Below are positions 1-18,962 of a DNA stretch of 64,000 nucleotides, piece by piece. The notes below the pieces were generated by a model. The model did not search any database. It was not told the DNA's origin and worked only from the letters and a program-made list of their open reading frames with translations. Within the stretch, counting starts at the first letter, position 1, and the number at the start of each line of letters is the position of its first letter. The position numbers and the translations under genes were made by a program. The stretch covers positions 1 through 64,000 of IMG/VR virus record IMGVR_UViG_3300037054_000148; one strand, written 5' to 3'.

Positions 1-58
1 AACCAGATTATGATTTCCGGTGGGGTGACTGGGGGGGGGGTGGGCTCAATCGGAGTGG

Positions 59-307
59 TCATAGGTTGGGGGCCGGTTCCCAGAGGGCAATGCTCATCAC
101 CACAAAACCGGGCTTCTGTTCAAAGTCGGTTAGGTAGGTCACACGAGCATATTGGGTGTGGCCGGTGTAGCTCTCGCCATTCCACTCCCGCAGTAAGAGC
201 ATATCCCCCTTCTGAAAATTACGGTCGTTTTTGCGGATTTCAAACCGTTTCATTTCGGTGATGATCTCATCAAAAAACTGAGGGAGGGTCTTAAGTTCGT
301 GAAGCAT
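59..307 (-). CDS. DUF3850 / ASCH-PUA domain protein
   Basis: HELK..P.FF, KRFEIRKNDRNFQKGD.L.L.EW signature; ATG at 307 overlaps the TAA of the upstream small ORF, so it is preferred over the track start at 334. Confidence 0.75.
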   Translation of the reverse strand: MLHELKTLPQFFDEIITEMKRFEIRKNDRNFQKGDMLLLREWNGESYTGHTQYARVTYLTDFEQKPGFVVMSIALWEPAPNL

Positions 308-462
308 TAGGGCTCCGGCATGATGATGTAGCAACTGAGGGGGTCTGGGTTGGTCTGGTTCAATCGATTAGCCTCTCCTTGAGCCACCTCAGCCTCTTCA
401 AAAATCAGTCCCGTGGGGTGGTGGTAATCCCAATAATCGAGTCTAACTATTCGGAAGGGCAT
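307..462 (-). CDS. small hypothetical protein (51 aa)
   Basis: Read manually: MPFRIVRLDYWDYHHP...IMPEP*, GGAG RBS, stop overlaps next ATG. Confidence 0.4.
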   Translation of the reverse strand: MPFRIVRLDYWDYHHPTGLIFEEAEVAQGEANRLNQTNPDPLSCYIIMPEP

Positions 463-482
463 ATGTTCTCCAGATACAACAA

Positions 483-510
483 GGCCCCACCCTGGAAACA
501 GAGTGGGGCC
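483..510 (-). terminator. hairpin downstream of DUF2828 gene
   Basis: GGCCCCAC/GTGGGGCC inverted repeat followed by a weak U-rich tail. Confidence 0.5.
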
Positions 511-516
511 GGGGCC

Positions 517-1947
517 TTACAGGGTGATCGGCTCGTAGCGAGGTCCGTTGAGGACTTCGAGCATCATCTCCATCGGGGTCGTGGCCTGAGCCTTGATCGC
601 CTTTTCGAAGATGCTGGGGCTGCATCCGGAGACCAGATACGTGCCCTTCTCGTCCATCGTGACCGGGGTCTGGTCGTTGCGGGAACTCACGTTCCAGAAG
701 ATGATGGTCGGGAGCTTGAAGCCGGAGGCCGCGTACTTCGCCTTGATCACTTCCAGGTTGGTGTTGTTGCCCACGCAGGAGTCGAACTCCATGTCGGAGA
801 TGATGAAGATCTTGGTGGGCATCTCGGAGGCCGGGAGCTTCGCCTTGACCGCAGTTGCCAGAACCACGTTGAACACGGCCTGGAGGTCGGTGTTCATGCC
901 CCAGTTGGCCTGGGACAGGTTCTTGATCTTCTCATAGAGGGTCTGCCCCTTGAGAGCCTGGATGCTAGGAGTTCCACTGAAAGTGATGAACTTGTCGTGG
1001 AAGATCCCCTTGTTCCGCTCAGCCAGATAGATGGCGAGGGAGATGCACACGGTGATCGGAGCGACCGTTCCCATGCCACTGAACATGGAGCCCGAAACGT
1101 CCGCGACAACGAGAGCGTTGTCATCGGTGTCTGCGTAGTTCGGCAGGCACTTCCACATCGCCTCAGCGGTCTGGTCCTTCTCGTTCATGGACTTGGCGAC
1201 CAGTTCGTAGGGGTAGAGGGTGCCGGAGTTGATCTTCTCCTCCCCGCGCACAACCGCAGCCAGGAACTCGTCGTAACGAGTGCCATCGTGACGCTTGAAC
1301 GCATCCTTGTAGATCAGACCCGCACGGGATGGAATCTGGCCATAGGAGATGGTGTCCCACTGGTTCTGAGACATGAGGGTCTCGACCAGCTTGATCTTCC
1401 CACGCAGGGTGGACAGGTTCTTGCGGTACTGGACCGGAGTCCACCCCAGGGCCTTGACCCAGCGGTGTGCCAGGGAGACGGTCTCCTTGGAAGAAGTGTT
1501 GATGCTGGGCATCCACTTCGCCAGGAGGCTCACGCCATCCTCGGACCCAAGGTCCAGGTTAAGCTGCTCACGGATGACGGACACGACCTTGGGGTCGGAC
1601 ACGTACTCCACAATGTCATCCCAGCGTCCGTAGACCGGCACGTAGGACAGAATGTGATCGAACACCTCACGGAAGTTCTTGTACAGTTCACGGAGCCCCT
1701 GGCGGAAGGTCTCGCGCTCCCCCTGACCCCCACGGATGTCGCGGATGTAGAAGAGGCAGCGGATGGCCGTCAGACGGTCCTCACCGAATGCCTTCAGGAA
1801 GAGGGCAGTGTTGTCCTGGCCCCGACGAGCGGGGGCGTGGTAATAGAAGTCGAGCACACCGTCCAGCGTGGACTGATGCGTCAGCGCACCGTTCTCGGTA
1901 CGGGTGTAGTTCTGGGACTTCTGGATGGCGTTAAGTAGGTTGGACAC
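517..1947 (-). CDS. DUF2828-family Ro60/TROVE-like protein with C-terminal vWA domain
   Basis: TENGA..H.ST, RDIRGGQGER, YGRWDD and LAKWMP motifs, vWA MIDAS DVSGSM and ISDMEFD; AAGGAG RBS; strong GC3 codon bias. Confidence 0.85.
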   Translation of the reverse strand: MSNLLNAIQKSQNYTRTENGALTHQSTLDGVLDFYYHAPARRGQDNTALFLKAFGEDRLTAIRCLFYIRDIRGGQGERETFRQGLRELYKNFREVFDHILSYVPVYGRWDDIVEYVSDPKVVSVIREQLNLDLGSEDGVSLLAKWMPSINTSSKETVSLAHRWVKALGWTPVQYRKNLSTLRGKIKLVETLMSQNQWDTISYGQIPSRAGLIYKDAFKRHDGTRYDEFLAAVVRGEEKINSGTLYPYELVAKSMNEKDQTAEAMWKCLPNYADTDDNALVVADVSGSMFSGMGTVAPITVCISLAIYLAERNKGIFHDKFITFSGTPSIQALKGQTLYEKIKNLSQANWGMNTDLQAVFNVVLATAVKAKLPASEMPTKIFIISDMEFDSCVGNNTNLEVIKAKYAASGFKLPTIIFWNVSSRNDQTPVTMDEKGTYLVSGCSPSIFEKAIKAQATTPMEMMLEVLNGPRYEPITL

Positions 1948-1979
1948 GTCGATCTCCTTGAAGGAAAAGTTGAAAAATC

Positions 1980-2093
1980 AAGACACCGTTGATGCTTCAT
2001 CGGCGGGGAAGCTCGAAAACCGCTTGACGAGCTAGGGGGTAGTTAGCCACCATCACTCGTCCGCTCATATTTGAGGTTTGCTGCAAGTGTCTT
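1980..2093 (-). ncRNA. RCAGCAA stem RNA copy B (Y-RNA-like candidate)
   Basis: AAGACAC-UU-GCAGCAAAC...GUGUCUU closing stem; ends 33 nt before the DUF2828 start. Confidence 0.7.
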
Positions 2094-2112
2094 ACAGGAA
2101 CAACAAAGTTAC

Positions 2113-2162
2113 TAGACGCAGTTTCGTTCCATGACAGGGGAAGAAGTTGCTGTTAGCGTCTA
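2113..2162 (-). ncRNA. RCAGCAA stem RNA copy A (Y-RNA-like candidate)
   Basis: UAGACGC-UA-ACAGCAAC...GCGUCUA closing stem, starting just after a -10-like box. Confidence 0.7.
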
Positions 2163-2169
2163 CCTAAAG

Positions 2170-2177
2170 ATAATACC
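2170..2177 (-). promoter_or_regulatory. -10-like element (GGTATTAT) for the RNA A-RNA B-DUF2828 unit
   Basis: GG-TATTAT 7 nt upstream of the copy A stem. Confidence 0.5.
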
Positions 2178-2217
2178 GCGAATTTTGTTTTTTGGATTAC
2201 TTTTTTTTCGAAAAAGC

Positions 2218-2691
2218 TCAATCGGGGTTGTAAGAGGCGACGAAGGCAGCGATAAGAGCCATGATTTCAGTATTTGAATAAAGTCGCTGGCTAACTCCAA
2301 AGACTGGCGGAACCGTGTTGTCAATCTTCAAAACCAGTCCGTCTACGATCTTGTTCAGTGGAATGTAGACCGGATAGCCAATATCAAGGTTGCTGTCCGT
2401 CAGAACCATGATCGGGTCTGCCTCTAACAAATCGGCCCAACGTTGGACTGATTCAGGGAGCTTGGTGCTGATGCCGTCAGTGGCTCCAGGATCGGTGAAG
2501 ATATAGAAGGTGCCAGTAGGGCCCAAAACCCAAGTTGGTTGATCCTGAATCGGCTGAGCGGAGAACGTGAGACGATACATTTCACACAAAACGCCTAATG
2601 GGTCGAACCCATTAGGCGTATGTAAATACTGATCAGTCCAGGGATAAGTGGTGGCTTCTAGGGTAGAGACCCACTCGGTTAAGATGGACAT
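2218..2691 (-). CDS. hypothetical protein
   Basis: 157 aa ORF, GGAGGAG RBS. Confidence 0.65.
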   Translation of the reverse strand: MSILTEWVSTLEATTYPWTDQYLHTPNGFDPLGVLCEMYRLTFSAQPIQDQPTWVLGPTGTFYIFTDPGATDGISTKLPESVQRWADLLEADPIMVLTDSNLDIGYPVYIPLNKIVDGLVLKIDNTVPPVFGVSQRLYSNTEIMALIAAFVASYNPD

Positions 2692-2758
2692 ATAAGCTCC
2701 TCCCGTGTCATTAGCCTATTTTGTAGGTTCACACATTAGAAGCGGCTAGTCGCTGAGC

Positions 2759-3484
2759 TTACTTAGGATCTGCTGGGGGAACCGGAGGTGGGTTGAACGT
2801 CTGAACGTTAGGAACCCCAGCCGAAACACTGGTTGCTGCACTCGGATCCAGAATCATGGAATCAGCGCGATCCTGATCGGAGAAATCTGGAGCAGCGATT
2901 CCTCTGGCCGACATACGGTAAGCGGTGCTGCTCTTGGAGAGGGTCTTGAAGGTGTTGCCTACACTGGCTCCGTTGGCCGCATAGCTCATACTCTTACCAG
3001 CGGAAACACCGATTCGGTCTCCGGCCAGGACCGCATCCTGGTTGGCCCCCAAGAACAAGAACTCCCATTTCCAGACTTCGGTCTGTTCGGTGATCATGGC
3101 CTTGATGGTCTGATAGGTGTATTCCTTGCTGCTGTTCTCTTCCCCATCGGTGAGGATGACGACCATGACCTTTTCGGGACGGTCGGCCTCATCCATGGCA
3201 GCCAGCTTGGCCCCCAGGTTCTTGATGGTGACACCGATAGCGTCCAGCATGGCGGTCATGCCACGAGGCTGGAGGGTGAACTCAGGGGCCTCATTGATGG
3301 GGATCACCCCGTATTCGAGTTCGATCCGGTCATCAAATGTAGTGAGGCTGATGGTGGCCTCCCCAGGCAGAGCCTTCTGTTCCTTCAAGAAGGTGTTATA
3401 GCCTCCTTCAGTGTCGGCCTTGATGTTGGCCATCGAGCCTGAACGGTCAATGATGGCTGAAATGTGAGTATATCCGTCTTTCAT
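2759..3484 (-). CDS. vWA domain protein
   Basis: IIDRSGSM MIDAS, TAMLDAIG, ILTDGEENSS, FLFLGANQDA; start moved to MKDGY at 3484 after AAGGAG. Confidence 0.85.
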   Translation of the reverse strand: MKDGYTHISAIIDRSGSMANIKADTEGGYNTFLKEQKALPGEATISLTTFDDRIELEYGVIPINEAPEFTLQPRGMTAMLDAIGVTIKNLGAKLAAMDEADRPEKVMVVILTDGEENSSKEYTYQTIKAMITEQTEVWKWEFLFLGANQDAVLAGDRIGVSAGKSMSYAANGASVGNTFKTLSKSSTAYRMSARGIAAPDFSDQDRADSMILDPSAATSVSAGVPNVQTFNPPPVPPADPK

Positions 3485-3722
3485 GTAGTGCGCTCCTTTA
3501 AAGGATAATACTCGGAGTTGACAAATAAAAACGCCCCCGATTGGAGGCATTTCACTTATTTTTTCAACAGATCAGATCCACTTGAAGTGGGTGCAGACCA
3601 TCTGGAGGATGACCAGATCGGCCATTCCGGCAATATACCAGACCAGGGGGCTGCGGAGACCCCGCTGGGCGCGGAGGATGAGACGAGTGAGACGATTCAT
3701 GTAGGGCTCCTTTGAGGTTGGG

Positions 3723-3929
3723 TTATTCCTGAGCGATGGAGATGGTAACAAGCATATGCTTGTCGTCATAGAACTGGAGGTCTCCGTTGAACGGCCCGAC
3801 CCAGTTAAGGGTCCAGCCCTTAGTGGCCATGGCAGCCACGATTGCTTCGTGGTGCCGACTGGGGAGCCTAGGACACTCATTATCCGATGGATGCCGAGTC
3901 AAGGTTGGGGCTGCGGTGTTCTTTGTCAT
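3723..3929 (-). CDS. hypothetical protein
   Basis: 68 aa ORF right after the promoter at 3950-3979. Confidence 0.5.
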   Translation of the reverse strand: MTKNTAAPTLTRHPSDNECPRLPSRHHEAIVAAMATKGWTLNWVGPFNGDLQFYDDKHMLVTISIAQE

Positions 3930-3949
3930 CAGAGGTGCCCTCCATTTCT

Positions 3950-3979
3950 AGTATACTCACAATTGGGGCAATTCGTATA
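3950..3979 (-). promoter_or_regulatory. sigma70-like early promoter
   Basis: TATACG-N18-TATACT. Confidence 0.6.
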
Positions 3980-3982
3980 CAA

Positions 3983-4390
3983 CTATTTCGTAGACTTCAT
4001 GTTTGCCACAGTGGTGTGCCAGACTTTCCGGTAACCTTTCGCCGGTCTGGTGAAGTTGACGAAGGGGGTCATCCCCAGTTCCTCAGCAATTTCTTCCAGC
4101 CGATGGGAGTAGCAGTTTAGCCACCAGTAAAGTTTTCCATCAGTCTGAATATCAGGGTCATACTCATACTCCACGATCTCTCCCTCATACTTTCCCCATG
4201 CCTTCAAATTCGCAGGCTTCTCCCTACGGACCACGGTGATATGAGCTTTGACTCTGAGGCCGTTGACCGAGAACCATTTAGGAATGAGCCACCGGTAGAA
4301 CATGGGGATTCCGGGGCAGATCTCCAGCACGAGCCGGTATCCGTACTCAGGAGTGTGGTCGTAATGGAGCTTGCCGGTGAGTTTGATCAT
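3983..4390 (-). CDS. putative 2H phosphoesterase
   Basis: Two HxT motifs (AHITV, WHTTV). Confidence 0.6.
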   Translation of the reverse strand: MIKLTGKLHYDHTPEYGYRLVLEICPGIPMFYRWLIPKWFSVNGLRVKAHITVVRREKPANLKAWGKYEGEIVEYEYDPDIQTDGKLYWWLNCYSHRLEEIAEELGMTPFVNFTRPAKGYRKVWHTTVANMKSTK

Positions 4391-4743
4391 AGTCTCGGGT
4401 GGTAGTCAAGGATGGAGCAACGGTCTGCCTCAGCACCGATGTCTCGGAACAATTGAACGAGCCGTTCGGCGGCGGGGGGGTTGGCCGAATGAACGATGTG
4501 GTATTGATGGCTAAAATGGCGTTCGAAATCATTAGGGGGAGCCCAAAACAGACTCTTGAGCCGTTCGATCACATCCTGGCCGTCTCCCAGGTCGTTGTCC
4601 CAACTGATCACATCGAACAAATCGAAATATTCAACGTCACGAGGGAACTTAGTCCAGATGGTCAGATCGGTGGAGGGCAAGGCTGCACGGAAAATGTGCT
4701 CCCTCTCTGCCAGTCCCTGGTCGTCCAAAACAAGAATACGCAT
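4387..4743 (-). CDS. receiver-like domain protein (cyclic-phosphate-processing type)
   Basis: ILVLDD...ISWDNDLG...IVHSANP pattern; overlaps the 2H gene. Confidence 0.65.
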   Translation of the reverse strand: MRILVLDDQGLAEREHIFRAALPSTDLTIWTKFPRDVEYFDLFDVISWDNDLGDGQDVIERLKSLFWAPPNDFERHFSHQYHIVHSANPPAAERLVQLFRDIGAEADRCSILDYHPRL

Positions 4744-4760
4744 ATAAATCCCTTCCTCAT

Positions 4761-4790
4761 ATTATACCCAATATGAGGAAGGGATGTCTA
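4761..4790 (-). promoter_or_regulatory. sigma70-like early promoter
   Basis: TAGACA-N18-TATAAT. Confidence 0.65.
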
Positions 4791-4793
4791 GTC

Positions 4794-5117
4794 TTATTTG
4801 ATAAACTTGCGGATTCGTTCTGCCGCTCCGCTCAACTCTTCCCAGGTTGGTCCACCCAATGTGTTGGACAGCCAATAGGCATCCCAAGTGATGAAAAAAG
4901 CCGTGCATTCCTTGATCAGAGGGGCCGTGTAAAACTTTCTGAATGCCTCATCGGAACCCCATCCACTGAGATCGAAACCATACCGATTAGCCACCTCTCG
5001 AAGCTCTTTGAACAGCCGGTCGCGCTCCTCCTGGCTCCTCTCATCTCCTGTCTGGTCAGAGAAGGAGATGATCAGATCCTCTTTCGGTTTCCAGGAGGAG
5101 GCGTAGTGGTCGGGCAT
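4794..5117 (-). CDS. hypothetical protein
   Basis: 107 aa ORF in the co-directional gene run. Confidence 0.55.
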   Translation of the reverse strand: MPDHYASSWKPKEDLIISFSDQTGDERSQEERDRLFKELREVANRYGFDLSGWGSDEAFRKFYTAPLIKECTAFFITWDAYWLSNTLGGPTWEELSGAAERIRKFIK

Positions 5118-5141
5118 ACTACATATTACTGCAAAGCCTTC

Positions 5142-5534
5142 TTATTTGTTCAAAAGTTTTAGCTCGGCCTCGATCTGAACCGGAAGGCATGTCTGGAACC
5201 CTTGTTGCTTGATCAGGACGTTGGATTCGACCGGTTTGTGCCCATCAGCCAGACTCAGGGTAATGTGGTAACAACCCCCATCAGGACGACGAGAAGAGCC
5301 GTTCACCTCACAGACCAGACACTCCACCCCATCCCCGGTCTGGAATCCCACGACCTGAAGTTCTGCATTGGCCAATTGCTCTTGGAGCAGGGCCGCAGAC
5401 TCCTCCGTCAGATTAAATTGAACGGTGATGTGTTGGCACATGACTTTCTTGAAGTGGGGCTTGAACTGGCCCAATAGGGAGGTACGGGAGGCCGGTGCCA
5501 GTTCGAACGCGAGATACTGTGACTGAATTGACAT
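5142..5534 (-). CDS. 2H cyclic phosphodiesterase (tRNA-ligase CPDase-like)
   Basis: HITV and YHITLS motifs, KPVESN. Confidence 0.7.
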   Translation of the reverse strand: MSIQSQYLAFELAPASRTSLLGQFKPHFKKVMCQHITVQFNLTEESAALLQEQLANAELQVVGFQTGDGVECLVCEVNGSSRRPDGGCYHITLSLADGHKPVESNVLIKQQGFQTCLPVQIEAELKLLNK

Positions 5535-5589
5535 GATGGCTCCAAGAAAATGCCCCTCTCAGAGGGGCAGGAAGTGCGTTCACGGAAAA

Positions 5590-5859
5590 CTACTGGTATT
5601 CGGGGCAATCCTTACGGGCTTCTTCGTTATACTGCCCCTCCAGGTCTTCATAGATGTCGAGGGTCTTGAGTTCCTGGGGAGTGAGTTCCATATCCCCATC
5701 CCTGGAGCCCATCAGGACTCCCTCACCCATCGCACAGCCATAGGTGGCAGAGTGCTTCCAATCCCGATCATGGACCAGAGCCGGGGTATCCGGATCAGCG
5801 GGGTTGAGAAGAAGACTGATGCGGTTCGAGATGCGAATGTCTTTGCGTTCGAGAGCCAT
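5590..5859 (-). CDS. hypothetical protein
   Basis: 89 aa ORF with GAGGAG RBS. Confidence 0.6.
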   Translation of the reverse strand: MALERKDIRISNRISLLLNPADPDTPALVHDRDWKHSATYGCAMGEGVLMGSRDGDMELTPQELKTLDIYEDLEGQYNEEARKDCPEYQ

Positions 5860-6026
5860 GTGATTCTCCTCAAAGGGGCACTGGCCCCTACCGATACCAC
5901 AAAAGCCCCGGCTACCGGGGCTATGCGGGACTGCTGGAGAGGCTGACCTACTACATTCAGCCTATTCTGCCGGATCTACGTATCGGGGGTCTTTGGCCTT
6001 CCTAAGCTCCCCGGCACTCCAGCCGG

Positions 6027-6383
6027 TTAGACTTCGGCCATCTTCTTGCCCTTCTCTTCCCAGCGGCCCAGGCTGCGGCGGCTGATGTTGAGCAGGGCCG
6101 CGAGTTCGGTGCGGCTGTACCCCTTGCGGTTCCGGTACTGGGTGATGGTCTCACCGGAGTAGTCGGTCTTGGGGGCCGGGGGGGTGCGCTTGGGCTCCGG
6201 CAGTTTGACCTCGGGCTTCGGCTCGTCGGGCAGGAGCCGGATGTCGCGGGGCTCGAACAGCTTGCCCTCCAGGAGAGCCAGCAGGGCCTCCCCCAGATTG
6301 TCGGGGATACCGACATAGAGGCCCCCGCCCAGATGGGTGGCAGTGACCTTGATTCCGTTGATGCTGAAGTGCTTGCCTTCCAT
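6027..6383 (-). CDS. XRE-family HTH protein
   Basis: C-terminal YRNRKGYSRTELAALLNISRRSLGRWE; own promoter and RBS. Confidence 0.8.
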   Translation of the reverse strand: MEGKHFSINGIKVTATHLGGGLYVGIPDNLGEALLALLEGKLFEPRDIRLLPDEPKPEVKLPEPKRTPPAPKTDYSGETITQYRNRKGYSRTELAALLNISRRSLGRWEEKGKKMAEV

Positions 6384-6424
6384 GTTACTCTCCTTTGAGT
6401 GGGCTCTTCGTCCCCTACCTAACT

Positions 6425-6453
6425 AGTATACCCTGGTTTGGGGGGTTTGTATA
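6425..6453 (-). promoter_or_regulatory. sigma70-like early promoter
   Basis: TATACA-N17-TATACT. Confidence 0.65.
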
Positions 6454-6454
6454 G

Positions 6455-6490
6455 AAAAAAATCGCCCCCGAAGGTTTATTTTCGGGGGCG
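6455..6490 (-). terminator. intrinsic terminator closing the RNA island
   Basis: CGCCCCCGAA/TTCGGGGGCG stem followed by U7 on the minus strand. Confidence 0.8.
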
Positions 6491-7236
6491 GGTGTTATGG
6501 CGGGTGGAGTTGTTTAGGTTCCACATCGGCAACTTTTCCTCCCCAGTGTTTCGGACTTCTTCCACTCTCCGTATCACGATTCCTGTCTTCGGAGAGCCGG
6601 GGGGCTCAGTCTATCAAAGTCTTTTGCGGTAACCCGCTCGGGAGAATCGACTCCCTTATTGCCGTAACTGATTTCGCTCTGCCTGATAAGAGCGGCCTCG
6701 CTCCTTTGGTCAACCATTCATCTGGTTGCCGCCATATCGGAGCCCCAAGGACATTGAGGGGCTTCAACGATTTTGTAAATCCGGAGGAACTTGGTACCGG
6801 TTCCTCCGGCTAAGGCAGAGCTTCTGACATAGACCACGACTCTTTCACCCAATCAGAGGGGTCTCGCTAACAAGGAATATTTGCTGGGTCGCTCATCCTC
6901 GGTTCAAACGTGTCAGTGCTACTGCGATCTTACTGCTCTCCGCTCGGGCTTTATCCGGTCTTACTCACTTGGCGGGGTTCAGGGGCTCGACCCCTTAGCA
7001 GGAAATTGCTGGAACTAGAGGCATTGTCCAGCCATGTCAGAATTGTCACCTTTCACTCGCGCAGGAGGGGGTATCTGACTCGTTCAAAAGCAGAACCGTG
7101 ATGAGTGGTATTCGGCGTTTTGCTAGCACGGTAGCCAAAAATCTTCATCCAGTGGGGGCACCCCTTGCCGTACGGTACCCCCCATTGTAGAGGCCACAAC
7201 CCCTCTACTCTCTCAGTTCTGCGGTACTACTTCCAA

Positions 7237-7321
7237 GACGCTTGGTGCAACTATTCTGCCGCCTCAAGGACGGACGAGGGACGTTGCCAACCCCATGAAT
7301 AGGTAGTTTGCTGTGAGCGTC
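7237..7321 (-). ncRNA. RCAGCAA stem RNA copy F
   Basis: GACGCU-C-ACAGCAAAC...AGCGUC. Confidence 0.55.
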
Positions 7322-7592
7322 GTATACTCTGCCTGCAAGTTTTTAAGCATTGCGGGGCTACTTGTAGAGAAATCGAGGGGGTCGCTGAGAGCCGAATCGA
7401 ACGGTTCACGCAGTAGGGGGCGAGTGGACCTCGGCACATGGCTCTCGGATCCAACTGGCACTTGGCACGGGTTATCAACACCGCCCCACAAGAACTGATG
7501 CTCTCCATGAGCTAGCTCAGTTCCCCCTCTTGTAGGGAATGAGGGTGTCAAACCTTACTCCCTTGTTTTCAATGAACTTCCTACCTTACCTA

Positions 7593-8024
7593 TTACTGTA
7601 ATTTTGAAGAAGTTTTAATATTTTTTCTTACGGACAATCCAAATCTATATTTCCTTCCATGGTGTAAAACTTCGAAATTGTCAATGTGACATTTTGGGTG
7701 GAGTACCATGCAATTTTCAGGCTCTTTGCTACCCCCTTCATCGATCAAATCAATATGGTGGTAAGTGGCCTTAAACCTGTTTTCTATTGAGGTGTGGCAC
7801 CATTGGCAAATGCCTGATTCCTGTTCAAATCTAAGTTTTTTAGTAGCAGCGGTAAACTCGAATGGTCGGCGTTTAGCAGATCTTTCTGCATTAGAGGCAA
7901 ACTTTCTTGTGTAAACCCTTGAAGGGTCATTTATTTCCAAACGATGACAGGCAGTCTTAATAACTCCCTCTGAGACTCCAAAATGCTGACCACACTGTAT
8001 CCCAGGTCGGACTCGAACCGACAT
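7593..8024 (-). CDS. HNH endonuclease
   Basis: CQWC...HHI....GG....NC..LH..CH; start uncertain because it lies in a tRNA-like gene. Confidence 0.7.
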   Translation of the reverse strand: MSVRVRPGIQCGQHFGVSEGVIKTACHRLEINDPSRVYTRKFASNAERSAKRRPFEFTAATKKLRFEQESGICQWCHTSIENRFKATYHHIDLIDEGGSKEPENCMVLHPKCHIDNFEVLHHGRKYRFGLSVRKNIKTSSKLQ

Positions 8025-8590
8025 AGTTCTCCATGTAGGGGAGACCTGAAAACCTTTCCAGGCACTGGGATGTTGGCGGAAGTGGAGAGAGTCGAACTCT
8101 CATGGCTCTTTTGAAGCCAACCCGTATTCGAAGCGGGGCCGATACCAATTTCGGTTGACACTTCCTTGTAGTGTTCATAGGCGTGGCAGTTGGCGCACAG
8201 GACTTCAAGGTTTTCAGGCTCGTTGGAGCCCCCCAGCTTCTTGGGAACCTTATGGTGGACTTCAAGAACTTCTATATGCTCTGAGTACCCACAGCGGCAG
8301 CACTTTGCCCCATGAGTAGCCAACCCAAGGAGTCGTGTGTAACGCTTGGACTTGTGCCCTCCAGTGAAGTATTTTATCCCTAGTCGGCCCCTATTTGCAC
8401 ACACTTTGCTACAGTACGTTCGACCTTTGGTCTGAAACTCCTTCTCACAAATGGGGCACTTGGTGAATTTCTTACCTTCAACGTGAGAGCAGATTACAGA
8501 GCAAAACACCGGCCCCTTCTCCATCTCATTGGGTCTGCGGTAGATGGGAGTTGAGCACACACTGCATGTGGTGTTGGGTGTTCTTGGCAT
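7931..8590 (-). CDS. HNH homing endonuclease with Cys-rich N-terminus
   Basis: CxxC repeats, EVHHK...GG.N...NL..LCANCH; GGAGG RBS before ATG 8590; the 3' end runs through two tRNA genes. Confidence 0.8.
   Translation of the reverse strand: MPRTPNTTCSVCSTPIYRRPNEMEKGPVFCSVICSHVEGKKFTKCPICEKEFQTKGRTYCSKVCANRGRLGIKYFTGGHKSKRYTRLLGLATHGAKCCRCGYSEHIEVLEVHHKVPKKLGGSNEPENLEVLCANCHAYEHYKEVSTEIGIGPASNTGWLQKSHESSTLSTSANIPVPGKVFRSPLHGELCRFESDLGYSVVSILESQRELLRLPVIVWK
7998..8071 (-). tRNA. atypical tRNA-Val(UAC)
   Basis: AUCCCAG/CUGGGAU acceptor, T-loop UUCGAGU, anticodon loop CCUACAU with C33; no encoded CCA. Confidence 0.55.
8074..8165 (-). tRNA. tRNA-Ser(CGA)
   Basis: Cloverleaf, loop UUCGAAU, long variable arm, G73-CCA. 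Confidence 0.9.
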
Positions 8591-8652
8591 TTCGCCTCCG
8601 TGATGAATTTCATTGGAGGAACAGAAAGCCACTTCCTTCATCCACTTTTACG

Positions 8653-8726
8653 TGGAGCGCACGGGGCTGAGTCGAACAGTCATAGGCTACCTGAGTATCC
8701 TCGCCCACCGGGGCTTGTCCTCGCGC
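8653..8726 (-). ncRNA. SelC-shaped aberrant tRNA-like RNA
   Basis: 8 bp acceptor, D-loop CGGU, T-loop UUCGACU, UCAG loop at the anticodon position, U-CCA end. Confidence 0.5.
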
Positions 8727-8782
8727 TAGCTGCAACGGTTTGACCAGTCTATCCAACAGGATGGATCAAGACCGTTGCAGAT

Positions 8783-9319
8783 TCAGTAGGATTGGCCAGC
8801 CGCATACCTCTGTCGGCGTGTGTAGCGGCCACTCCCTTTGTTCCGGCCCTTGTACGTGGGAAGCTGCATCCCGCAGTTCCCGCACACAAGGCGCAGATTT
8901 GTGAGTTGATTGTTGGAGGAGTTCCCATCGATGTGGTCTACCTCCAGGGGCATCAGATGTCCCTGCCACTCTGTGCCCTTGCAAATTGAGCACTGGTGAG
9001 GTTGCGTGGCAATTACCACCTTCTTCAAGGTCTTGGGGTGAGAAGGAGCAATACCGGTGTCCTCAGCTTGGGCCAGGATGACAAGCCCCCTATGTGCCCC
9101 ATGGCATTGTCGATCACAGTAAAGTTTATTGGGACGAAGGGGGAGAGGTTTCCCGCAATTCTTGCAAAATTTTGGTGGCTGAGGAGAGGAACAACGGTTG
9201 ACGTTTACGTTGGGGTTCTTAGCCCCATTGACTTTTCCGAAGCAACTAAGGCTACAAAATTTGGACTTCGAATTGGATGTTTTGTACTCTTGATGACAGT
9301 ATTCGCAAGACTTCAGCAT
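8783..9319 (-). CDS. HNH homing endonuclease
   Basis: LEVDHIDGNSSNN...NLRLVCGNC...PTYKGRN. Confidence 0.85.
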   Translation of the reverse strand: MLKSCEYCHQEYKTSNSKSKFCSLSCFGKVNGAKNPNVNVNRCSSPQPPKFCKNCGKPLPLRPNKLYCDRQCHGAHRGLVILAQAEDTGIAPSHPKTLKKVVIATQPHQCSICKGTEWQGHLMPLEVDHIDGNSSNNQLTNLRLVCGNCGMQLPTYKGRNKGSGRYTRRQRYAAGQSY

Positions 9320-9367
9320 GAATGACCCCTACCATTGAGGTAGGAAGTCAGATAACTGAGTTCACTT

Positions 9368-9456
9368 TGGAGCCGCAGGAGGGATTCGAACCCCCGAGAT
9401 CCTTTCGGCCTTCACCTTACAAGGGTGCTGCTCTGACCGGCCTGAGCTACTGCGGC
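9368..9456 (-). tRNA. tRNA-Thr(UGU) with long variable arm
   Basis: GCCGCAG/CUGCGGC acceptor, loop CUUGUAA, 16 nt variable region, CCA. Confidence 0.85.
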
Positions 9457-9475
9457 TTGGTACTAAGGTAAAAAA

Positions 9476-9564
9476 TGGCGGAAGATGTCGGATTCGAACC
9501 GACTTGCCCTTGCGGAACTCCAGTTTTCAAAACTGGCGCGACACTCCAGCTTCGCGGATCTTCC
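9476..9564 (-). tRNA. tRNA-Ser(UGA)
   Basis: Loop UUUGAAA, long variable arm, G73-CCA. Confidence 0.85.
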
Positions 9565-9604
9565 GGAGGAAATGGAATATGCAGCCCTTCTTTAGAGGCT
9601 GCCA

Positions 9605-10279
9605 ATGAAACGGATTGAACGAACTTATACTGAGGAAATTTTCAAAGAAGCAGTGTTAGGCTCCACTTGTGTGCGGGAGGTGTTAACCAAACTCAACATT
9701 GTTGCTGAGGGAGGAAACTACCGGCAATTTTATCAAACGCTCAAAAAATGGCCAGTTAGCACTAAGCACTTTGTGGGGAAAAGCTGGAGCAAAGGGGTGA
9801 AACTCCCGCCAAGACGAGACCTGGATGATTATTTAAACAACCGCTTCCCTATTCAATCAGCAAAACTGAAACAAAAGCTCTTTTCAGAGGGGGTATTCAT
9901 AAAACAATGTGGTATATGTGGGTTAGTTAAATGGAACAAGCTCTCGATCCCCCTAGAATTGGACCATATCAATGGTAATCATATGGATAATACCCTAAGT
10001 AATCTTAGAGTAATTTGCCCTAATTGCCATGCACAAACTGATACCTATCGAGGTAAAAATATCTCAAAGTCACCCTCCCCTCCTAAAGAAAAGAAGTCTA
10101 TAAAACCACAACCGACAAAAATAGAGTGGCCTTCGCATGAAGAACTACTTGCGCGTCTTGCTACTTCCAACTTTTCTGTGTTAGCCAGAGAATTAGGAGT
10201 GTCTGATAATGCTATTAGGCATCACCTGTCCCCGAAGAGGGATTCGAACCCTCATACCCTTACGGATGCGAGATTTTAA
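9605..10279 (+). CDS. HNH homing endonuclease (antisense to the RNA island)
   Basis: LELDHINGNHMDN...NLRVICPNCHAQTDTY and a C-terminal HTH; AT-rich; 3' end overlaps tRNA-Leu. Confidence 0.88.
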   Translation: MKRIERTYTEEIFKEAVLGSTCVREVLTKLNIVAEGGNYRQFYQTLKKWPVSTKHFVGKSWSKGVKLPPRRDLDDYLNNRFPIQSAKLKQKLFSEGVFIKQCGICGLVKWNKLSIPLELDHINGNHMDNTLSNLRVICPNCHAQTDTYRGKNISKSPSPPKEKKSIKPQPTKIEWPSHEELLARLATSNFSVLARELGVSDNAIRHHLSPKRDSNPHTLTDARF

Positions 10280-10313
10280 GTCTCGTGCGTCTCGCCACTT
10301 CCGCCATTCGGGG
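10229..10313 (-). tRNA. tRNA-Leu(UAA)
   Basis: CCCCGAA/UUCGGGG acceptor, loop CUUAAAA, variable arm; CCA not encoded. Confidence 0.88.
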
Positions 10314-10318
10314 TGTTT

Positions 10319-10903
10319 TTAGTCCCAGAAGCAACCCCAATAACGAGCCATTAAAGTCTTAGCTCTCAGGCACTTCCTTTTCAACGGAGCAGACCATTGA
10401 TCGTGAAGCTCCTTATTGAAACGAGGAGTCTCAGTTTCCTTCATTCGAAAGCAATCCTCATGGCCCTCGACCGGCTCCCAATAGATAGGCTCCTTGCTAT
10501 AGGTTCCCTCCGGAACCGTAAACTCATCTTTGAGTTCCTGGGAAGCTTCCAGACCTTCAATGATCTCGGTGAGGGTAGCCTGCCATTTTTCGAAACCAGT
10601 ATCAGTTCCTTCCGTGTCAATGATCCGATCACCCATACCGCTTGGGTAGCCTTGCGTATGCTTCTTGAGATCGCGGAACAGACCCAACATCACGTTTTCG
10701 AGGTAGCTATCCATGTCCCAGTGATCGCAATCTGCGTATCCCCTGTAGCCACGCTGACAGAAGTATTTAACGGCTCTCCAATAGGTCCGTGGGTTGATCC
10801 AATGGCCCCAGAACCTCCACACAGGGCGGAAGCCGACGAAGGCCCGATAGCCACTGCTCCGTAGAGGGTAGAGGCCAAGGGAATAATGCATTTGTTTCTT
10901 CAT
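10319..10903 (-). CDS. hypothetical phage protein
   Basis: 194 aa, Trp-rich, overlaps the upstream stop. Confidence 0.7.
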   Translation of the reverse strand: MKKQMHYSLGLYPLRSSGYRAFVGFRPVWRFWGHWINPRTYWRAVKYFCQRGYRGYADCDHWDMDSYLENVMLGLFRDLKKHTQGYPSGMGDRIIDTEGTDTGFEKWQATLTEIIEGLEASQELKDEFTVPEGTYSKEPIYWEPVEGHEDCFRMKETETPRFNKELHDQWSAPLKRKCLRAKTLMARYWGCFWD

Positions 10904-11256: not shown

Positions 11257-11286
11257 TCAAAAGAGGAAATGGAAGTTTTAAAAAGC

Positions 11287-11379
11287 TAGACACGTTTGAC
11301 GTTTTAAGGACGGCAAAACTTTTTTGCAGGGGCACGAAGCCAGAGTCTGCTAGACAGGGTAGGTTGCTGCACGTGTCTA
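11287..11379 (-). ncRNA. RCAGCAA stem RNA copy C
   Basis: UAGACACGU-GCAGCAAC...ACGUGUCUA. Confidence 0.7.
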
Positions 11380-11443
11380 AAATTTACTAGGAGTCGCATA
11401 GCGTCTCCCGATTTCCTTCTACGCTTGGTAGATGAATGTCAGA

Positions 11444-11520
11444 TGGTCTTCCTGAGCGGAGTCGAACCGCTGGTCTATAGGTTCGGGGCCTATCGGTTTG
11501 TCCAGCTAGCCTACAGGAAG
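11444..11520 (-). tRNA. tRNA-Arg(CCG)
   Basis: CUUCCUG/CAGGAAG acceptor, loop CCCCGAA (C33), ACCA. Confidence 0.82.
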
Positions 11521-11525
11521 ATTAT

Positions 11526-12678: not shown

Positions 12679-12753
12679 TGGTTAGGGTGGAGGGAATCGA
12701 ACCCCCATAACTCGGGTCAAAGCCGAGCGCGACTACCGTTGTGCTACACCCCA
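12679..12753 (-). tRNA. tRNA-Gln(UUG)
   Basis: U1-A72, loop CUUUGAC, CCA. Confidence 0.88.
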
Positions 12754-12780
12754 ATGGGACCGGGCTTCCCCGGTCTGACG

Positions 12781-12933: not shown

Positions 12934-13056
12934 AAGGCACCTCCAAACGTAAGCAGATGCTTACACAGGAGGACTTTCGGATGCCTCTTTTCTCATTGTA
13001 TTGCTCCTTTATTTATTTATTTCAATCCGCTCACAATTTCTCGTGAGATAAAAACC

Positions 13057-13139
13057 AAGACCCCATGGCAGTTTTGCTCTAACTTTTGTTAGTGAGGACT
13101 GCCAACTCATCGCCATAGGTGATTTGCTGCTAGGGTCTT
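13057..13139 (-). ncRNA. RCAGCAA stem RNA copy D
   Basis: AAGACCC-UA-GCAGCAAAU...GGGUCUU. Confidence 0.7.
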
Positions 13140-13693
13140 TAGTTTGATACTCATATAGGGATTGGTCGCTACCCCAACTTCCTCCATTTTCCGATATTTC
13201 CAGTCTAGAGACTCCCTGCTTTCACAAACACTAGACTGGCGATTTAGGGGACTTATCGGGTGACTGTGTGTAAACCCGCTTTACCCTCGACGGTATCTTG
13301 CCACGGTACACTAAGCCGTAGCTCAGGAGGCCACCACCAGATCTGAATCTTAATGGCATGTCTGCTTTCCACGCTGCCCTATATTGAAATTATGTGGGAT
13401 GAGTCGCTACCTCATCTTCCTGGGATTATTGGGGCTGTTTCAACCCGCTCTCTGCTTTCGCATCCAGGCTCTTCGCTCGTCAGGCATGTGGCTACATGCT
13501 TCCACAAGATGTTTGATCTGGAGATGAATTCTGTTCGTCCGATATAACCGGCATGGACGACCTTCGCACGAGCGGCAGGTACCGGTAAAAAAGCTGCCTT
13601 ATCACTCCGGTGGGTTTCTCAGCATCCTCCTAAGAGGCCAAACCCGTTCTCGTATCACTGTGCCATATATCAGGTGCTCCGCACCCTCCAGAT

Positions 13694-14253: not shown

Positions 14254-14255
14254 GT

Positions 14256-17930: not shown

Positions 17931-18673
17931 ACTTTTCTCTAAAAGCGAGTCTTTCATTTAAACGATCCGCGAAGATTTGTGGGTAGGATCACACATTCCC
18001 ACCCCGTGCCAGAAGTTTAGTGACGCTATGGCTGGGGTGCCAACACTTTGGAATCGTGAGGCTGGCCTGAAGCGTCCTGGCTCGTGCGTCTACTCACTTA
18101 ACCCGGCCTTGTCTTCTGCTCCCGGTTTCCCGGTGAAATCAGAACCTAATCATTTCCGGATCATACCCAATTCTGCTTTCCCGAAGCACCTGATATTCTC
18201 GCTTCACAGACTCTAAGGGTATTTGTTTGAGCAGGTTGCAAAGAATCGATATGAGGTTTTGGTGAGACCCCTTACTCGAACCATTCTATGCCTCATGGTT
18301 CCTGTCAGGATTTTGCAGCGTAGATTCAAGAGCTTTCATTGGGCTCCCGTGTAGCACCTGACTGTCTCCCAGCCGTCAAGCTGGTATGGCCGGTTGACGC
18401 CGGTCACGCGATATACCCACGTTTTTCGTTTGGCACTGGAAAACGTGGAAACCTTTGGCCATAACCCCAACAATCTACGGTGCCGGTTTACCAGTCACGA
18501 GCGTAGAAACATCGTTGAGAGAGAAGCTGATTCGCCGGTTCCCGGTCTACTCTTAACGCCGCCGTGCGAGGGCTAATTAGCGAAGAGTGGAATTGTTGAC
18601 TCCAGGTTTATTTAAACTCTGTCTAGGTTCCCAGAGGTCCATTCCTGAAAATCCCCATCAGCAGAATAAAACT

Positions 18674-18759
18674 AGACGCCTCTGCCCTCTTGATTTTTGG
18701 AGAAGAGTGCGGAACTCCTGGCATGGGGTTTCCCCCTAGGTTGGTTGCTGCAAGCGTCT
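18674..18759 (-). ncRNA. RCAGCAA stem RNA copy E
   Basis: AGACGC-UU-GCAGCAAC...GCGUCU. Confidence 0.68.
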
Positions 18760-18962
18760 TAAGATTTGTATGGGCCTTCACTAGTTGCCCACCCACCAGC
18801 ACTTAACTTTATACAGAACAGGAGAACCTGCGGCTGGTTTCCGCCAGATGCCCTAAAGCACCAAGCAAGTCATTTCTAAAAACATATATTCAGTTGTCAA
18901 GTTGGTTCATTTCCCAGTTTCCTGGGGTTTCGAGGGTGACCTTGATCTAACCCTCTGAACTT

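What the first reader, a model, noticed from the sequence alone, without database searches (positions are those of the whole stretch)
1947..2177. Tandem motif RNAs form the 5' leader of the Ro60-like gene
Seen: -10 box (2170-2175), copy A about 7 nt later, copy B, then RBS and GTG at 1947. Inference: either the RNAs are processed from the same transcript as the protein, or the protein binds its own leader for autoregulation and the island copies titrate it.
Basis: partly seen in the sequence, partly recalled or inferred. Interest (0 to 1): 0.6.

Follow-up and report, generated by a model that had tools for sequence, protein, structure and literature searches.

The report
Phage Y-like RNAs beside Ro-like gene
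The two repeats upstream of this jumbo-phage gene are real small structured RNAs from a large family I did not find in Rfam 15 or the searchable papers; the family sits beside a Ro60-shaped protein gene in most of the 160 phage and bacterial loci I searched, so it is probably the RNA partner of a second, phage-borne kind of Ro/Y-RNA particle.

Summary
Copy A (2111-2164) and copy B (1978-2095) lie on the minus strand in the 270-nt gap upstream of gene 517-1947. A TATTAT box sits 7 nt before copy A, and an AAGGAG ribosome-binding site and a GTG start follow copy B.

Both copies belong to a 12-member family in this 313.6-kb phage. Each member has a closing stem whose variable base covaries, then an unpaired CAGCAA, then a variable inner domain.

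A covariance model built mostly from other phages finds only these copies in the genome. It gives 216 hits in 80 viral loci and 105 hits in 80 independent genome loci. All hits are on the strand of the homologous gene, and most are within 300 nt of it. Five phages without the gene give none.

The protein is Pfam DUF2828+DUF7788, not TROVE, but its predicted fold matches Ro60 structures best. Some family members carry a YrlA-like tRNA mimic, yet the stem lacks the Rsr-binding motif, and no Rfam family matches.

Best reading: these are Y-RNA analogues that partner the Ro-like protein and are co-transcribed with it. Metatranscriptome contigs bridge copy B and the gene. Binding is inferred, not shown. 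Autoregulation is possible but is not the conserved logic, because copies also lie downstream of the gene or far away among tRNAs.

The parts
517..1947 (-). Gene for a 476-aa Ro60-fold protein (helical ring plus vWA domain with a DxSxS metal site); GTG start
   Evidence: Pfam DUF2828 (1.2e-32) and DUF7788 (5.5e-50), no TROVE. PHROG 850 'RNA-binding protein' matches full length. The AF2 model (pLDDT 81.7) has Ro60 structures as its 13 best PDB matches, full length, E 1e-7 to 6e-4. D283, S285 and S287 are invariant in 27 homologues.
1954..1959 (-). AAGGAG ribosome-binding site, 6 nt before the GTG
   Evidence: Read from the sequence. AAGGAG is conserved in the relatives aligned.
1978..2095 (-). 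Copy B, long form (118 nt). Closing stem AAGACAC 2093-2087 pairs with GUGUCUU 1986-1980; unpaired CAGCAA 2083-2078; inner domain of three to four hairpins; tail GAUUUUUC 1979-1972
   Evidence: Model R1 scores 22.1 bits, E 0.0098, with filters off. The stem partner was found independently of the search pattern. The closing stem forms in the MFE and centroid folds. RNA-library contigs cover it fully in 3 runs. It is absent from the 92%-identical relative L110.
2111..2164 (-). Copy A, minimal form (54 nt). Closing stem UAGACGC 2162-2156 pairs with GCGUCUA 2119-2113; unpaired CAGCAA 2152-2147; short hairpin UUCC/GGAA; A-rich 3' loop
   Evidence: R1 scores 35.3 bits, E 7e-6, but this copy was one of the 80 model sequences. 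Orthologues occur in L110, L112 and L113 with the inner hairpin changed on both sides: UUCC/GGAA, CUAA/UUAG, CUUCC/GGAAG. Fold.
2170..2175 (-). -10-like TATTAT, 7 nt before the first base of copy A's stem; candidate promoter element without a -35
   Evidence: Sequence. TATTAT, TATCAT or TAACAT sits at the same distance in relatives. There is no RNA-library coverage of 2153-2224 while both flanks are covered. The sigma-70 scan does not call it.
7233..7325 (-). Family copy C (weakest; stem GACGCU/AGCGUC, CACAGCAA)
   Evidence: R1 scores 14.2 bits, E 0.71. One mismatch to the 15-nt pattern, with a stem partner.
11285..11381 (-). Family copy D, about 60 nt downstream of tRNA-Arg (the tmRNA gene lies just upstream of that tRNA); stem UAGACACG/CGUGUCUA, then GCUUUUU
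   Evidence: R1 scores 23.2 bits.
13055..13141 (-). Family copy E in the tRNA island; stem AAGACCC/GGGUCUU, then GGUUUUU
   Evidence: R1 scores 24.1 bits. Fold z-score -3.6.
18671..18762 (-). Family copy F; stem AGACGC/GCGUCU
   Evidence: R1 scores 22.3 bits.

Best explanation
Copies A and B are two genes of a conserved family of small structured RNAs, 45-135 nt long.

Each RNA has a 6-9 bp closing stem made by its two ends, typically 5'-[A/U]RGRNN...N'N'YCY[U/A]G-3'. Next to the stem is an internal loop whose 5' side carries the invariant CAGCAA, followed by a G-poor stretch, and whose 3' side is A-rich. Inside that is a variable module: a plain hairpin (copy A), several hairpins (copy B), or a tRNA-like unit of T arm, closed acceptor hairpin and D arm.

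This is the layout of Y RNAs. I infer that the stem-plus-CAGCAA module is the docking site for the Ro60-fold DUF2828/DUF7788 protein encoded next door, and that the variable module recruits or mimics something else, such as tRNA-handling enzymes, exonucleases or repair ligases. The particle would then act on RNA during infection.

In this locus the RNAs and the gene are most likely transcribed together, from a start at or just before copy A's first base. The RNAs are then probably cut out. The copies in the tRNA islands are wedged between tRNAs, so tRNA end-processing enzymes would release them.

Shown: the RNA family, its structure, and its strand- and distance-linked association with the gene family. 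Also shown: the Ro60 fold, absence of a canonical TROVE gene, and RNA-library contigs bridging RNA and gene.

Inferred: physical binding, excision and biological role.
For: 1. Family and structure. There are 10 exact pattern matches against 0 for the reversed control. All 12 copies have a covarying stem partner that was not part of the search. In 80 short forms from other phages all 7 stem pairs change on both sides, with 165 doubly changed cells against 48.7 in shuffles, and pairing collapses when the partner is slid. Those 80 were selected for a stem, so the independent evidence is points 2 and 3.

2. Enrichment. Stem plus CAGCAA gives 205 hits on the gene strand and 12 on the opposite strand. 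Nine control hexamers give 3-12 hits. Density peaks 0-400 nt before the gene start and 0-400 nt after its end.

3. Model R1.
- It finds exactly 6 hits in the window, all on the minus strand.
- It finds 5 more in the rest of the genome, all on the plus strand and between tRNAs.
- It finds 216 hits in the 80 viral loci, none on the opposite strand.
- In 80 genome loci never used for the model it finds 105 hits, none on the opposite strand, most within 300 nt upstream of the gene.
- It finds 0 hits in 860 kb of Bxz1, T4, T5, phiKZ and SPO1, which gave no DUF2828 match (the family's positive control did not fire).
- In whole-record searches of five phages with the gene, the best hit lies next to the gene in four of them; in the fifth (G002) it lies about 10 kb away, and another strong hit lies next to the gene.

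4. Protein. The top 13 PDB fold matches are all Ro60, full length, and the metal-site motif is invariant. No TROVE gene occurs in this genome or in three named phages that carry the RNAs, while Bxz1 has TROVE and no such RNA.

5. Y-RNA likeness. Copies at 203511-203630 and 204072-204190 match the tRNA-like part (positions 23-86) of Rfam YrlA at 32 bits. The copy in mycobacteriophage Clautastrophe scores 39 bits. Of 50 long forms, 25 carry a T-loop-like motif.

6. Co-transcription. See the contigs, the conserved -10-like hexamer and the short gaps to the start codon.

7. Published context.
- The Listeria phage CKA15 homologue lies downstream of abundant noncoding transcripts that the authors guessed might be Y RNAs (PMC12282133).
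- Bas63 gp130, which has a Ro60-like fold and lies upstream of the tRNA genes, counters the Ppl defence system (PMC11482910).
- LeBron gp53 is toxic when overexpressed alone (PMC13148394).
Against: - No binding data exist. Gene adjacency, however strong, is not proof of contact.
- The protein has no detectable sequence similarity to Ro60, even by profile. The TM-scores are moderate (0.37-0.55), and the ring geometry of the model is uncertain.
- Copies A and B have no tRNA-like module and no Rfam match at all.
- The RNA evidence comes from assembled contigs of metatranscriptomes. These cannot show ends, strand or abundance, and they may contain DNA.
- No evidence shows that A or B accumulate as separate small RNAs.
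- The -10 box lacks a -35.
Confidence: 0.7

Rival explanations
1. Cis-acting leader. The elements act mainly in the 5' UTR of the Ro-like mRNA. The protein binds stem+CAGCAA in its own leader and represses translation, and the dispersed copies compete for the protein.
For: The nearest upstream copy ends within 40 nt of the start codon in 19 of 59 viral loci and 28 of 68 genome loci. In some phages the stem's 3' strand abuts the GGAG. In the window, the stem of copy B ends 20 nt before the ribosome-binding site, inside the usual ribosome footprint. RNA-library contigs show the RNA and the coding sequence as one continuous stretch.
Against: Nine of 80 viral loci have copies only downstream of the gene, and 15 have copies on both sides. 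Named examples are Alf5 and Clautastrophe. Six of the 12 copies in this genome lie 200-260 kb away inside tRNA arrays. Other copies precede unrelated ORFs. The 92% relative lacks copy B and keeps copy A about 70 nt from the start. No predicted pairing hides the ribosome-binding site. tRNA-like inner modules make no sense for a simple operator.
Confidence: 0.15
2. The RNAs function without the protein. They could be decoys for host tRNA-cleaving or tRNA-sensing defences, or processing and punctuation elements of tRNA operons. On this view they merely share an 'RNA metabolism' neighbourhood with the DUF2828 gene.
For: Island copies begin at the 3' end of one tRNA, and some end 4-5 nt before the next. 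Many carry tRNA-like modules. Several are followed by a U-run. The genome also encodes Rnl1- and Rnl2-type RNA ligases.
Against: The link is to the gene itself, not to tRNAs. In the 80 genome loci most hits lie within 300 nt upstream of the gene, and all hits are on its strand. Five tRNA-carrying or large phages without the gene have no hits. The conserved part is the non-tRNA-like stem+CAGCAA module, which is what a dedicated binding protein would explain.
Confidence: 0.1
3. The elements are DNA-level signals, such as phage promoters, replication hairpins or recombination hairpins, rather than RNAs.
For: A conserved 15-nt word on the transcribed strand before genes could be a phage promoter. 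A -10-like box lies next to copy A.
Against: The 3' partner, 40-130 nt away, covaries with the 5' strand, which a promoter does not need. Inner modules are tRNA-like and partly match YrlA. Copies fill the spaces between tRNAs in tRNA arrays. RNA-library contigs cover copy B.
Confidence: 0.02

Closest known systems
Bacterial and phage Ro60 (Rsr, TROVE) with YrlA-type Y RNAs (Chen et al. 2014, PMC4201824; Rfam RF02553); Thermus phage phiLo phiRo60 with Yrl1/Yrl2 (PMC12135203; PDB 9KOP, 9L5Y)
   Same: A ring-plus-vWA protein is encoded within a few hundred bases of one to several small RNAs, on the same strand. The RNAs are modular: an end-to-end stem next to a conserved single-stranded word, plus a variable module that in many members is a T arm, closed acceptor hairpin and D arm in the YrlA order. 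The best structural matches of the protein are exactly these Ro60 structures. In phiLo the two Yrl RNAs also lie just upstream of the gene.
   Different: The protein is Pfam DUF2828+DUF7788, not TROVE, and shows no sequence-level match to Ro60 even by profile. The conserved RNA word is CAGCAA with an [A/U]RGR...YCY[U/A]G stem, not GNCGAA or GGUCCGA; only 1 of 80 short forms contains GNCGAA. No copy reaches the YrlA gathering score, and only the tRNA-like part aligns. Most members, including A and B, have no tRNA-like part. Copy number is high: 12 here, many inside tRNA arrays. The two systems did not co-occur in the genomes checked.
Ro60-like proteins of Felixounavirus Bas63 (gp130, counters the Ppl defence; PMC11482910) and Listeria phage CKA15 (CKA15_055, found in virions; PMC12282133); PHROG 850 / 'Ro-like RNA binding protein' of cluster L mycobacteriophages (PMC13148394)
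   Same: By annotation and position, these are relatives of the same family as the window's gene. My tblastn finds homologues in 706 phage records, including FelixO1-like, P100-like and cluster L phages. Those authors also suspected Y RNAs nearby.
   Different: [quoted passage not shown] Here the RNA family is defined and located in close relatives of those phages: Alf5 has 4 copies, LMTA-57 has 3 and Clautastrophe has 3. I did not check that Bas63 gp130 or CKA15_055 themselves are DUF2828 proteins. That rests on their described position and on relatives.
Other phage noncoding RNAs of tRNA regions (ROOL, drum, GOLLD; T4 stable RNAs C and D, the last from my own knowledge)
   Same: They are structured RNAs embedded among phage tRNA genes. 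ROOL-like and drum hits lie in the same Listeria phage tRNA region.
   Different: Their sequences and structures are different, and they have no conserved neighbouring protein gene. None of these Rfam models matches the copies here.

Membership tests
Ro60 / TROVE protein family | Match to the TROVE domain (Pfam PF05731) or sequence similarity to known Ro60 | tested here: not met
   Pfam gives only DUF2828 and DUF7788. There is no TROVE match anywhere in the genome, although the control genomes did match. phmmer and a 27-sequence profile against all PDB sequences give no Ro60 hit.
Ro60 / TROVE protein family | Fold: alpha-helical repeat ring followed by a vWA domain with a MIDAS DxSxS motif | tested here: met
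   The 13 best Foldseek matches of the AF2 model are Ro60 structures over about 500 columns, with E 1e-7 to 6e-4 and TM 0.37-0.55. D283, S285 and S287 are invariant.
Ro60 / TROVE protein family | Binds Y RNA on its outer surface and RNA ends in its central hole | not testable with these tools
   No protein-RNA docking or binding data are available.
YrlA-type Y RNA (Rfam RF02553) | Score at or above the family's gathering threshold (69 bits) | tested here: not met
   Copies A and B show no YrlA hit even at E<=10. The best in this genome is 32 bits, covering model positions 23-86 only. The best elsewhere are 39.3 bits and 34.1 bits.
YrlA-type Y RNA (Rfam RF02553) | GNCGAA(N)G word near the 5' end (presumed Rsr contact) | tested here: not met
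   Found in 1 of 80 short forms, while CAGCAA is in 80 of 80. The motif definition comes from PMC4201824.
YrlA-type Y RNA (Rfam RF02553) | tRNA-like module (T arm, closed acceptor hairpin, D arm) | tested here: inconclusive
   Present in copies 203511-203630 and 204072-204190 and in many long forms elsewhere. Absent from copies A and B and from all short forms.
YrlA-type Y RNA (Rfam RF02553) | Encoded within 4 kb of the Ro gene on the same strand | tested here: met
   Copies A and B end 31 and 164 nt upstream of the gene, on the same strand. Across all loci there are 216 and 105 hits on the gene strand and none opposite.
Cis-regulatory 5' leader (riboswitch or autoregulatory operator) | Always in the 5' UTR of the regulated gene, normally as a single element | tested here: not met
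   Copies lie only downstream in 9 of 80 viral loci and on both sides in 15. This genome has 12 copies, most of them far from the gene.
Sigma-70 promoter upstream of copy A | -35 and -10 hexamers with 16-18 nt spacing | tested here: not met
   The scan of 1800-2800 finds none. Only a -10-like hexamer exists, though it is conserved in position in relatives.
Intrinsic terminator after copy B | Compact G+C-rich hairpin directly followed by a T-run | tested here: not met
   The scan does not call it. The stem before the U-run closes a 100-nt domain. RNA-library contigs read through it into the gene.

The most novel reading that the evidence does not exclude
DUF2828/DUF7788 proteins and the stem+CAGCAA RNAs form a second, evolutionarily separate Ro/Y-type ribonucleoprotein that is mainly a phage invention. 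It would be an anti-defence or RNA-repair device, possibly carried in the virion, whose exchangeable RNA modules (tRNA mimics or hairpins) aim one protein at different host targets. The protein and the RNA docking site would have co-diverged from TROVE/GNCGAA. That would make this a natural swapped-specificity pair for studying how Ro-type rings read RNA.
Probability: 0.35. Interest if true: 0.85.

Novelty: new variant of a known kind. Interest (0 to 1): 0.78.

Why it matters
Ro60 and Y RNA particles are known from animals, about 5% of bacteria and a few phages, and how they work in bacteria is still unclear. Here a different protein family with the same fold is tied to a different, sharply defined RNA module. 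Homologues of the protein occur in 706 of 50,697 catalogued phage genomes, including FelixO1-like, P100-like, KVP40-like Vibrio, Campylobacter CP81-like and cluster L mycobacteriophages. They also occur in many Clostridia assemblies.

Published work has shown that a relative counters a bacterial defence system, is found in virions, and is toxic when overexpressed alone. In each case the authors could only guess at RNA partners.

Naming the RNAs makes those questions testable in easy laboratory phages: which RNA binds, what the tRNA-like modules recruit, and whether the RNAs are needed for counter-defence. It also explains unannotated gaps and the 'tRNA-OTHER' or pseudo-tRNA calls in many phage tRNA regions, and it supplies a candidate new RNA family for Rfam.

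Tried and rejected
- Rfam at gathering threshold over the whole window, and at E<=10 over 1800-2400, shows nothing at copies A or B. Rfam over seven loci holding the strongest family members shows nothing at their coordinates.
- The sigma-70 promoter and terminator scan finds no promoter and no terminator in the leader.
- Sequence-only searches of the PDB, with a single sequence and with a profile, give no Ro60 hit. Only the fold search shows the relation.
- The CAGCAA hexamer alone is only mildly enriched in the window, 50 against 34 expected, so it cannot serve as a marker by itself.
- RtcB, the usual neighbour of bacterial rsr-yrlA, is absent from this genome. RNA ligases of the Rnl1 and Rnl2 types are present instead.
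- I rejected a sigma-54-like reading of AGACAC..TTGCAG because the spacing does not fit. I rejected odd or intron-bearing tRNAs because there is no anticodon arm and ARAGORN makes no call.
- Blastn of the locus against the phage collection gave only weak coding-region hits.
- Literature: 'DUF2828' returns only plant and tardigrade papers. The supplements of Chen et al. 2014 and the 2020 Annual Review are not held, so I could not check their phage lists. Their search was restricted to TROVE-annotated genomes.
- DNA for the 76%-identical relative P0012 could not be fetched.
- The U-run after several copies was considered as a La- or Hfq-type tail or a terminator, but it is not general across the family.
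Full report
**1. What is at the coordinates**

The window is the first 64 kb of a 313,597-bp virus record. It is a jumbo phage from peat and freshwater metagenomes. The window holds 15 tRNA genes and a tmRNA gene, and more tRNA islands lie at 201-214 kb and 262 kb.

On the minus strand, ORF 2218-2691 ends at 2218. Then comes a 270-nt gap, and then a 476-aa ORF from GTG 1947 to 517.
- TATTAT at 2175-2170, followed by 7 nt.
- Copy A at 2164-2111.
- Copy B at 2095-1978.
- AAGGAG at 1959-1954, then the GTG start.

No ORF of 70 aa or more overlaps either copy.

**2. The copies belong to a family of structured RNAs**

The shared word AGACNCNNNCAGCAA occurs 10 times in the genome and not once when read backwards. 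Five copies lie on the minus strand in the window and five on the plus strand at 201-208 kb, always in the local direction of the tRNA genes. Allowing one mismatch adds 7322(-) and 262078(+).

The pattern says nothing about what lies downstream. Even so, each of the 12 copies has, 40-115 nt further on, the exact complement of its 5' strand. The free N position changes in step: C with G, A with U, G with C, and U with A. Most are followed by G and a U-rich run. The closing stem forms in 11 of the 12 minimum-energy folds. In the twelfth (201529-201589) the folded piece ends before the true 3' strand, GUGUCUA, that one search identified, so a different pairing forms.

So these are RNA (or at least single-strand) structures, not promoters.

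**3. The same RNA sits beside the same gene in other genomes**

The protein is Pfam DUF2828 plus DUF7788 and PHROG 850 'RNA-binding protein'. More than 6,000 relatives turned up in the protein search, and homologues occur in 706 catalogued phage records.

I fetched 80 viral loci with homologues of 38-98% identity. A simple scan looked for a stem of at least 7 bp, then 1-4 nt, then CAGCAA, then the complement within 170 nt.
- It gave 205 hits on the gene strand and 12 on the other strand.
- Nine control hexamers gave 3-12 hits.
- 73 of 80 loci were hit.
- Density peaked in the 400 nt before the gene (81 hits) and the 400 nt after it (39 hits).

I aligned eighty non-redundant short forms (A2). 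All seven stem pairs show changes on both sides, and pairing falls from 98% to about 35% when the partner is slid by one column. Those sequences were selected for having a stem, so this count describes the family rather than proving it.

The proof is the covariance model R1 built from A2:
- With filters off it finds six hits in the window, all on the minus strand. They are exactly the six copies.
- It finds five more in the other 250 kb, all on the plus strand. Each begins at the 3' end of a tRNA, and three of the five end 4-5 nt before the next tRNA.
- It finds 216 hits in the 80 viral loci, none on the opposite strand.
- In 80 loci from bacterial and archaeal assemblies, none of which was used to build the model, it finds 105 hits at E<=0.01. 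None is on the opposite strand, and most lie within 300 nt upstream of the gene.

Whole-record searches agree. In Listeria phage LMTA-57, E. coli phage Alf5 and mycobacteriophage Clautastrophe the hits lie next to the gene, as they do in one of two further metagenomic phage records (G001). In the other (G002) one strong hit lies immediately upstream of the gene and the remaining three 5-11 kb away.

Bxz1, T4, T5, phiKZ and SPO1 (860 kb) gave no DUF2828 match and no RNA hit. In one search the family's positive control did not fire, so absence of the gene there is only probable.

**4. Anatomy**

The family consensus has four parts:
- A closing stem of 6-9 bp whose outer pairs are fairly fixed ([A/U]RGR...YCY[U/A]) and whose inner pairs are free. 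A G follows the stem in 170 of 201 copies.
- A 5' loop strand of NNA-CAGCAA followed by about eight G-poor bases.
- A variable inner module.
- An A-rich 3' loop strand.

Copy A is a minimal form with one small hairpin. Its orthologues in relatives keep the stem and CAGCAA while the hairpin changes on both sides. Copy B is a long form with three to four hairpins.

Half of the long forms elsewhere (25 of 50) carry a T-loop-like motif. Many have a T arm, a closed acceptor hairpin and a D arm in the order described for YrlA.

**5. The protein**

There is no TROVE match in the protein or anywhere in the genome. There is no sequence match to any solved structure, even with a profile.

The AlphaFold model (mean pLDDT 81.7) has Ro60 structures as its 13 best PDB matches, aligned over the full length. 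They include Thermus phage phiRo60, Deinococcus Rsr and Xenopus and human Ro60. After them come isolated vWA domains. The MIDAS DxSxS motif is invariant in 27 homologues.

'Ro60-like' is therefore right for the fold and wrong for family membership.

**6. Relation to known Y RNAs**

YrlA RNAs lie within 4 kb of TROVE-type Ro genes on the same strand. They have a GNCGAA word near the 5' end and a tRNA-like module (PMC4201824). That survey was limited to TROVE-annotated genomes.

In the present family the tRNA-like modules of some members align to the middle of the Rfam YrlA model at 32-39 bits, against a threshold of 69. The stem region does not align. GNCGAA is absent. Copies A and B match nothing in Rfam 15.

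The two systems look like alternatives. Bxz1 has TROVE and no CAGCAA RNA. The window's phage, LMTA-57, Alf5 and Clautastrophe have the CAGCAA RNAs and no TROVE.

**7. Transcription of this locus**

Four peat and permafrost metatranscriptome runs hold parts of the stretch as assembled contigs.
- In three runs one contig spans the start codon and all of copy B, and stops inside copy A: 1701-2128, 1804-2150 and 1289-2152.
- No run covers 2153-2224, which contains the TATTAT box and the A-rich spacer.
- The upstream ORF is covered again from 2225 in one run.

This is what a transcript starting at about 2152-2165 and running through both RNAs into the gene would give.

Contigs cannot show ends, strand or abundance, and DNA carry-over is possible, so this is supportive and not conclusive.

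Relatives add weight. A -10-like hexamer (TATTAT, TATCAT, TAACAT) keeps its 6-8 nt distance from copy A at 92%, 69% and 68% protein identity. Across loci, the nearest upstream copy ends a median 54-68 nt before the start codon, which often leaves no room for a separate promoter.

The scan finds no sigma-70 promoter or terminator here.

**8. Which reading fits**

The option 'autoregulatory leader titrated by island copies' is not the conserved logic, for three reasons:
- Copies lie only downstream of the gene in 9 of 80 viral loci, and on both sides in 15.
- This genome has copies inside distant tRNA arrays.
- The 92% relative has lost copy B.

A steric effect of bound protein on the nearby ribosome-binding site cannot be excluded.

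**9. Function**

The role is inferred by analogy with Ro/Y particles: RNA quality control, tethering of exonucleases, and RNA repair.

Context fits that analogy. The genome encodes Rnl2- and Rnl1-type RNA ligases but no RtcB. The Listeria phage has RtcB 1.3 kb downstream of the gene. An ASCH-like putative RNA-binding gene lies just downstream here.

Published experiments on relatives point the same way:
- Bas63 gp130, which has a Ro60-like fold and lies upstream of the tRNA genes, counters the Ppl defence (PMC11482910).
- CKA15_055 is found in virions and lies downstream of abundant noncoding transcripts (PMC12282133).
- LeBron gp53 is toxic when overexpressed (PMC13148394).

None of these papers defines the RNA.

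**10. Novelty**

Ro-type protein plus modular small RNA is a known kind of system. Here both partners differ at the family level, and the RNA family is absent from Rfam 15 and from the literature I could search. I cannot exclude a description in journals that are not held.

Noticed in passing
window 59-334 (-): A 91-aa DUF3850/ASCH protein (PHROG 986, 'RNA-binding protein') is encoded 180 nt downstream of the Ro-like gene on the same strand. It may belong to the same RNA-handling module.
   Followed up: partly
window 1-2000 versus 2001-20000: The Ro-like gene region has G+C of 0.57, against about 0.48-0.53 in the surrounding 20 kb. This hints at separate ancestry or selection on this gene.
   Followed up: no
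window 2591-2619 (-): A perfect 13-bp hairpin has a T-loop-like GGGTTCGACCC centre and is followed by a T-run. It lies inside the predicted ORF 2218-2691. It looks like a terminator or a tRNA fragment, and the ORF call may be wrong.
   Followed up: no
window 42117-42635 (-); genome 195078-195689 (+): The genome encodes Rnl2-type and Rnl1-type RNA ligase genes but no RtcB, so it has RNA-repair enzymes.
   Followed up: partly
genome 201529-207958 (+) and 262076-262196 (+) (loci L098, L099, L102): Six more family copies sit among tRNA genes. Four begin at the 3' end of a tRNA and the other two 10-20 nt after one; at least three end 4-6 nt before the next. Two carry a YrlA-like T arm, closed acceptor hairpin and D arm. 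The copy at 262 kb has CAGCAC instead of CAGCAA.
   Followed up: yes
window about 12480-12580 (-): There is a sub-threshold match to the wcaG RNA motif (30.9 bits; threshold 42) next to tRNA-Gln.
   Followed up: no
L089 (Listeria phage LMTA-57) 2483-2581 and 4970-5521: A drum RNA (50.2 bits, above threshold) and a ROOL-like RNA (88.5 bits, just below threshold) lie in the tRNA region upstream of the DUF2828 gene. Together with the three CAGCAA RNAs, they may account for the three abundant noncoding transcripts reported for the related phage CKA15.
   Followed up: partly
L110 1430-1500 (92%-identical relative): Copy B is replaced by a short hairpin (CTCATGGC-CGT-GCCATGAG) and an ACAA repeat. 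This shows recent gain or loss of an RNA copy between close relatives.
   Followed up: partly
L090 (E. coli phage Alf5) 5716-6550, and about 248 Felixounavirus records: The gene and its downstream RNA copies are conserved at 81-100% identity across FelixO1-like phages. Some records annotate 'tRNA-OTHER' or pseudo-tRNA in this stretch, probably the tRNA-like long form.
   Followed up: partly
window 2128 and 2150: Two metatranscriptome contigs run into sequencing adapter exactly at 2128 and 2150, inside copy A, which means recurrent fragment ends there. These could be RNA 5' ends or reverse-transcriptase stops in the structured RNA. Adapter-joined ends also occur elsewhere in the gene (821, 1675).
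   Followed up: no
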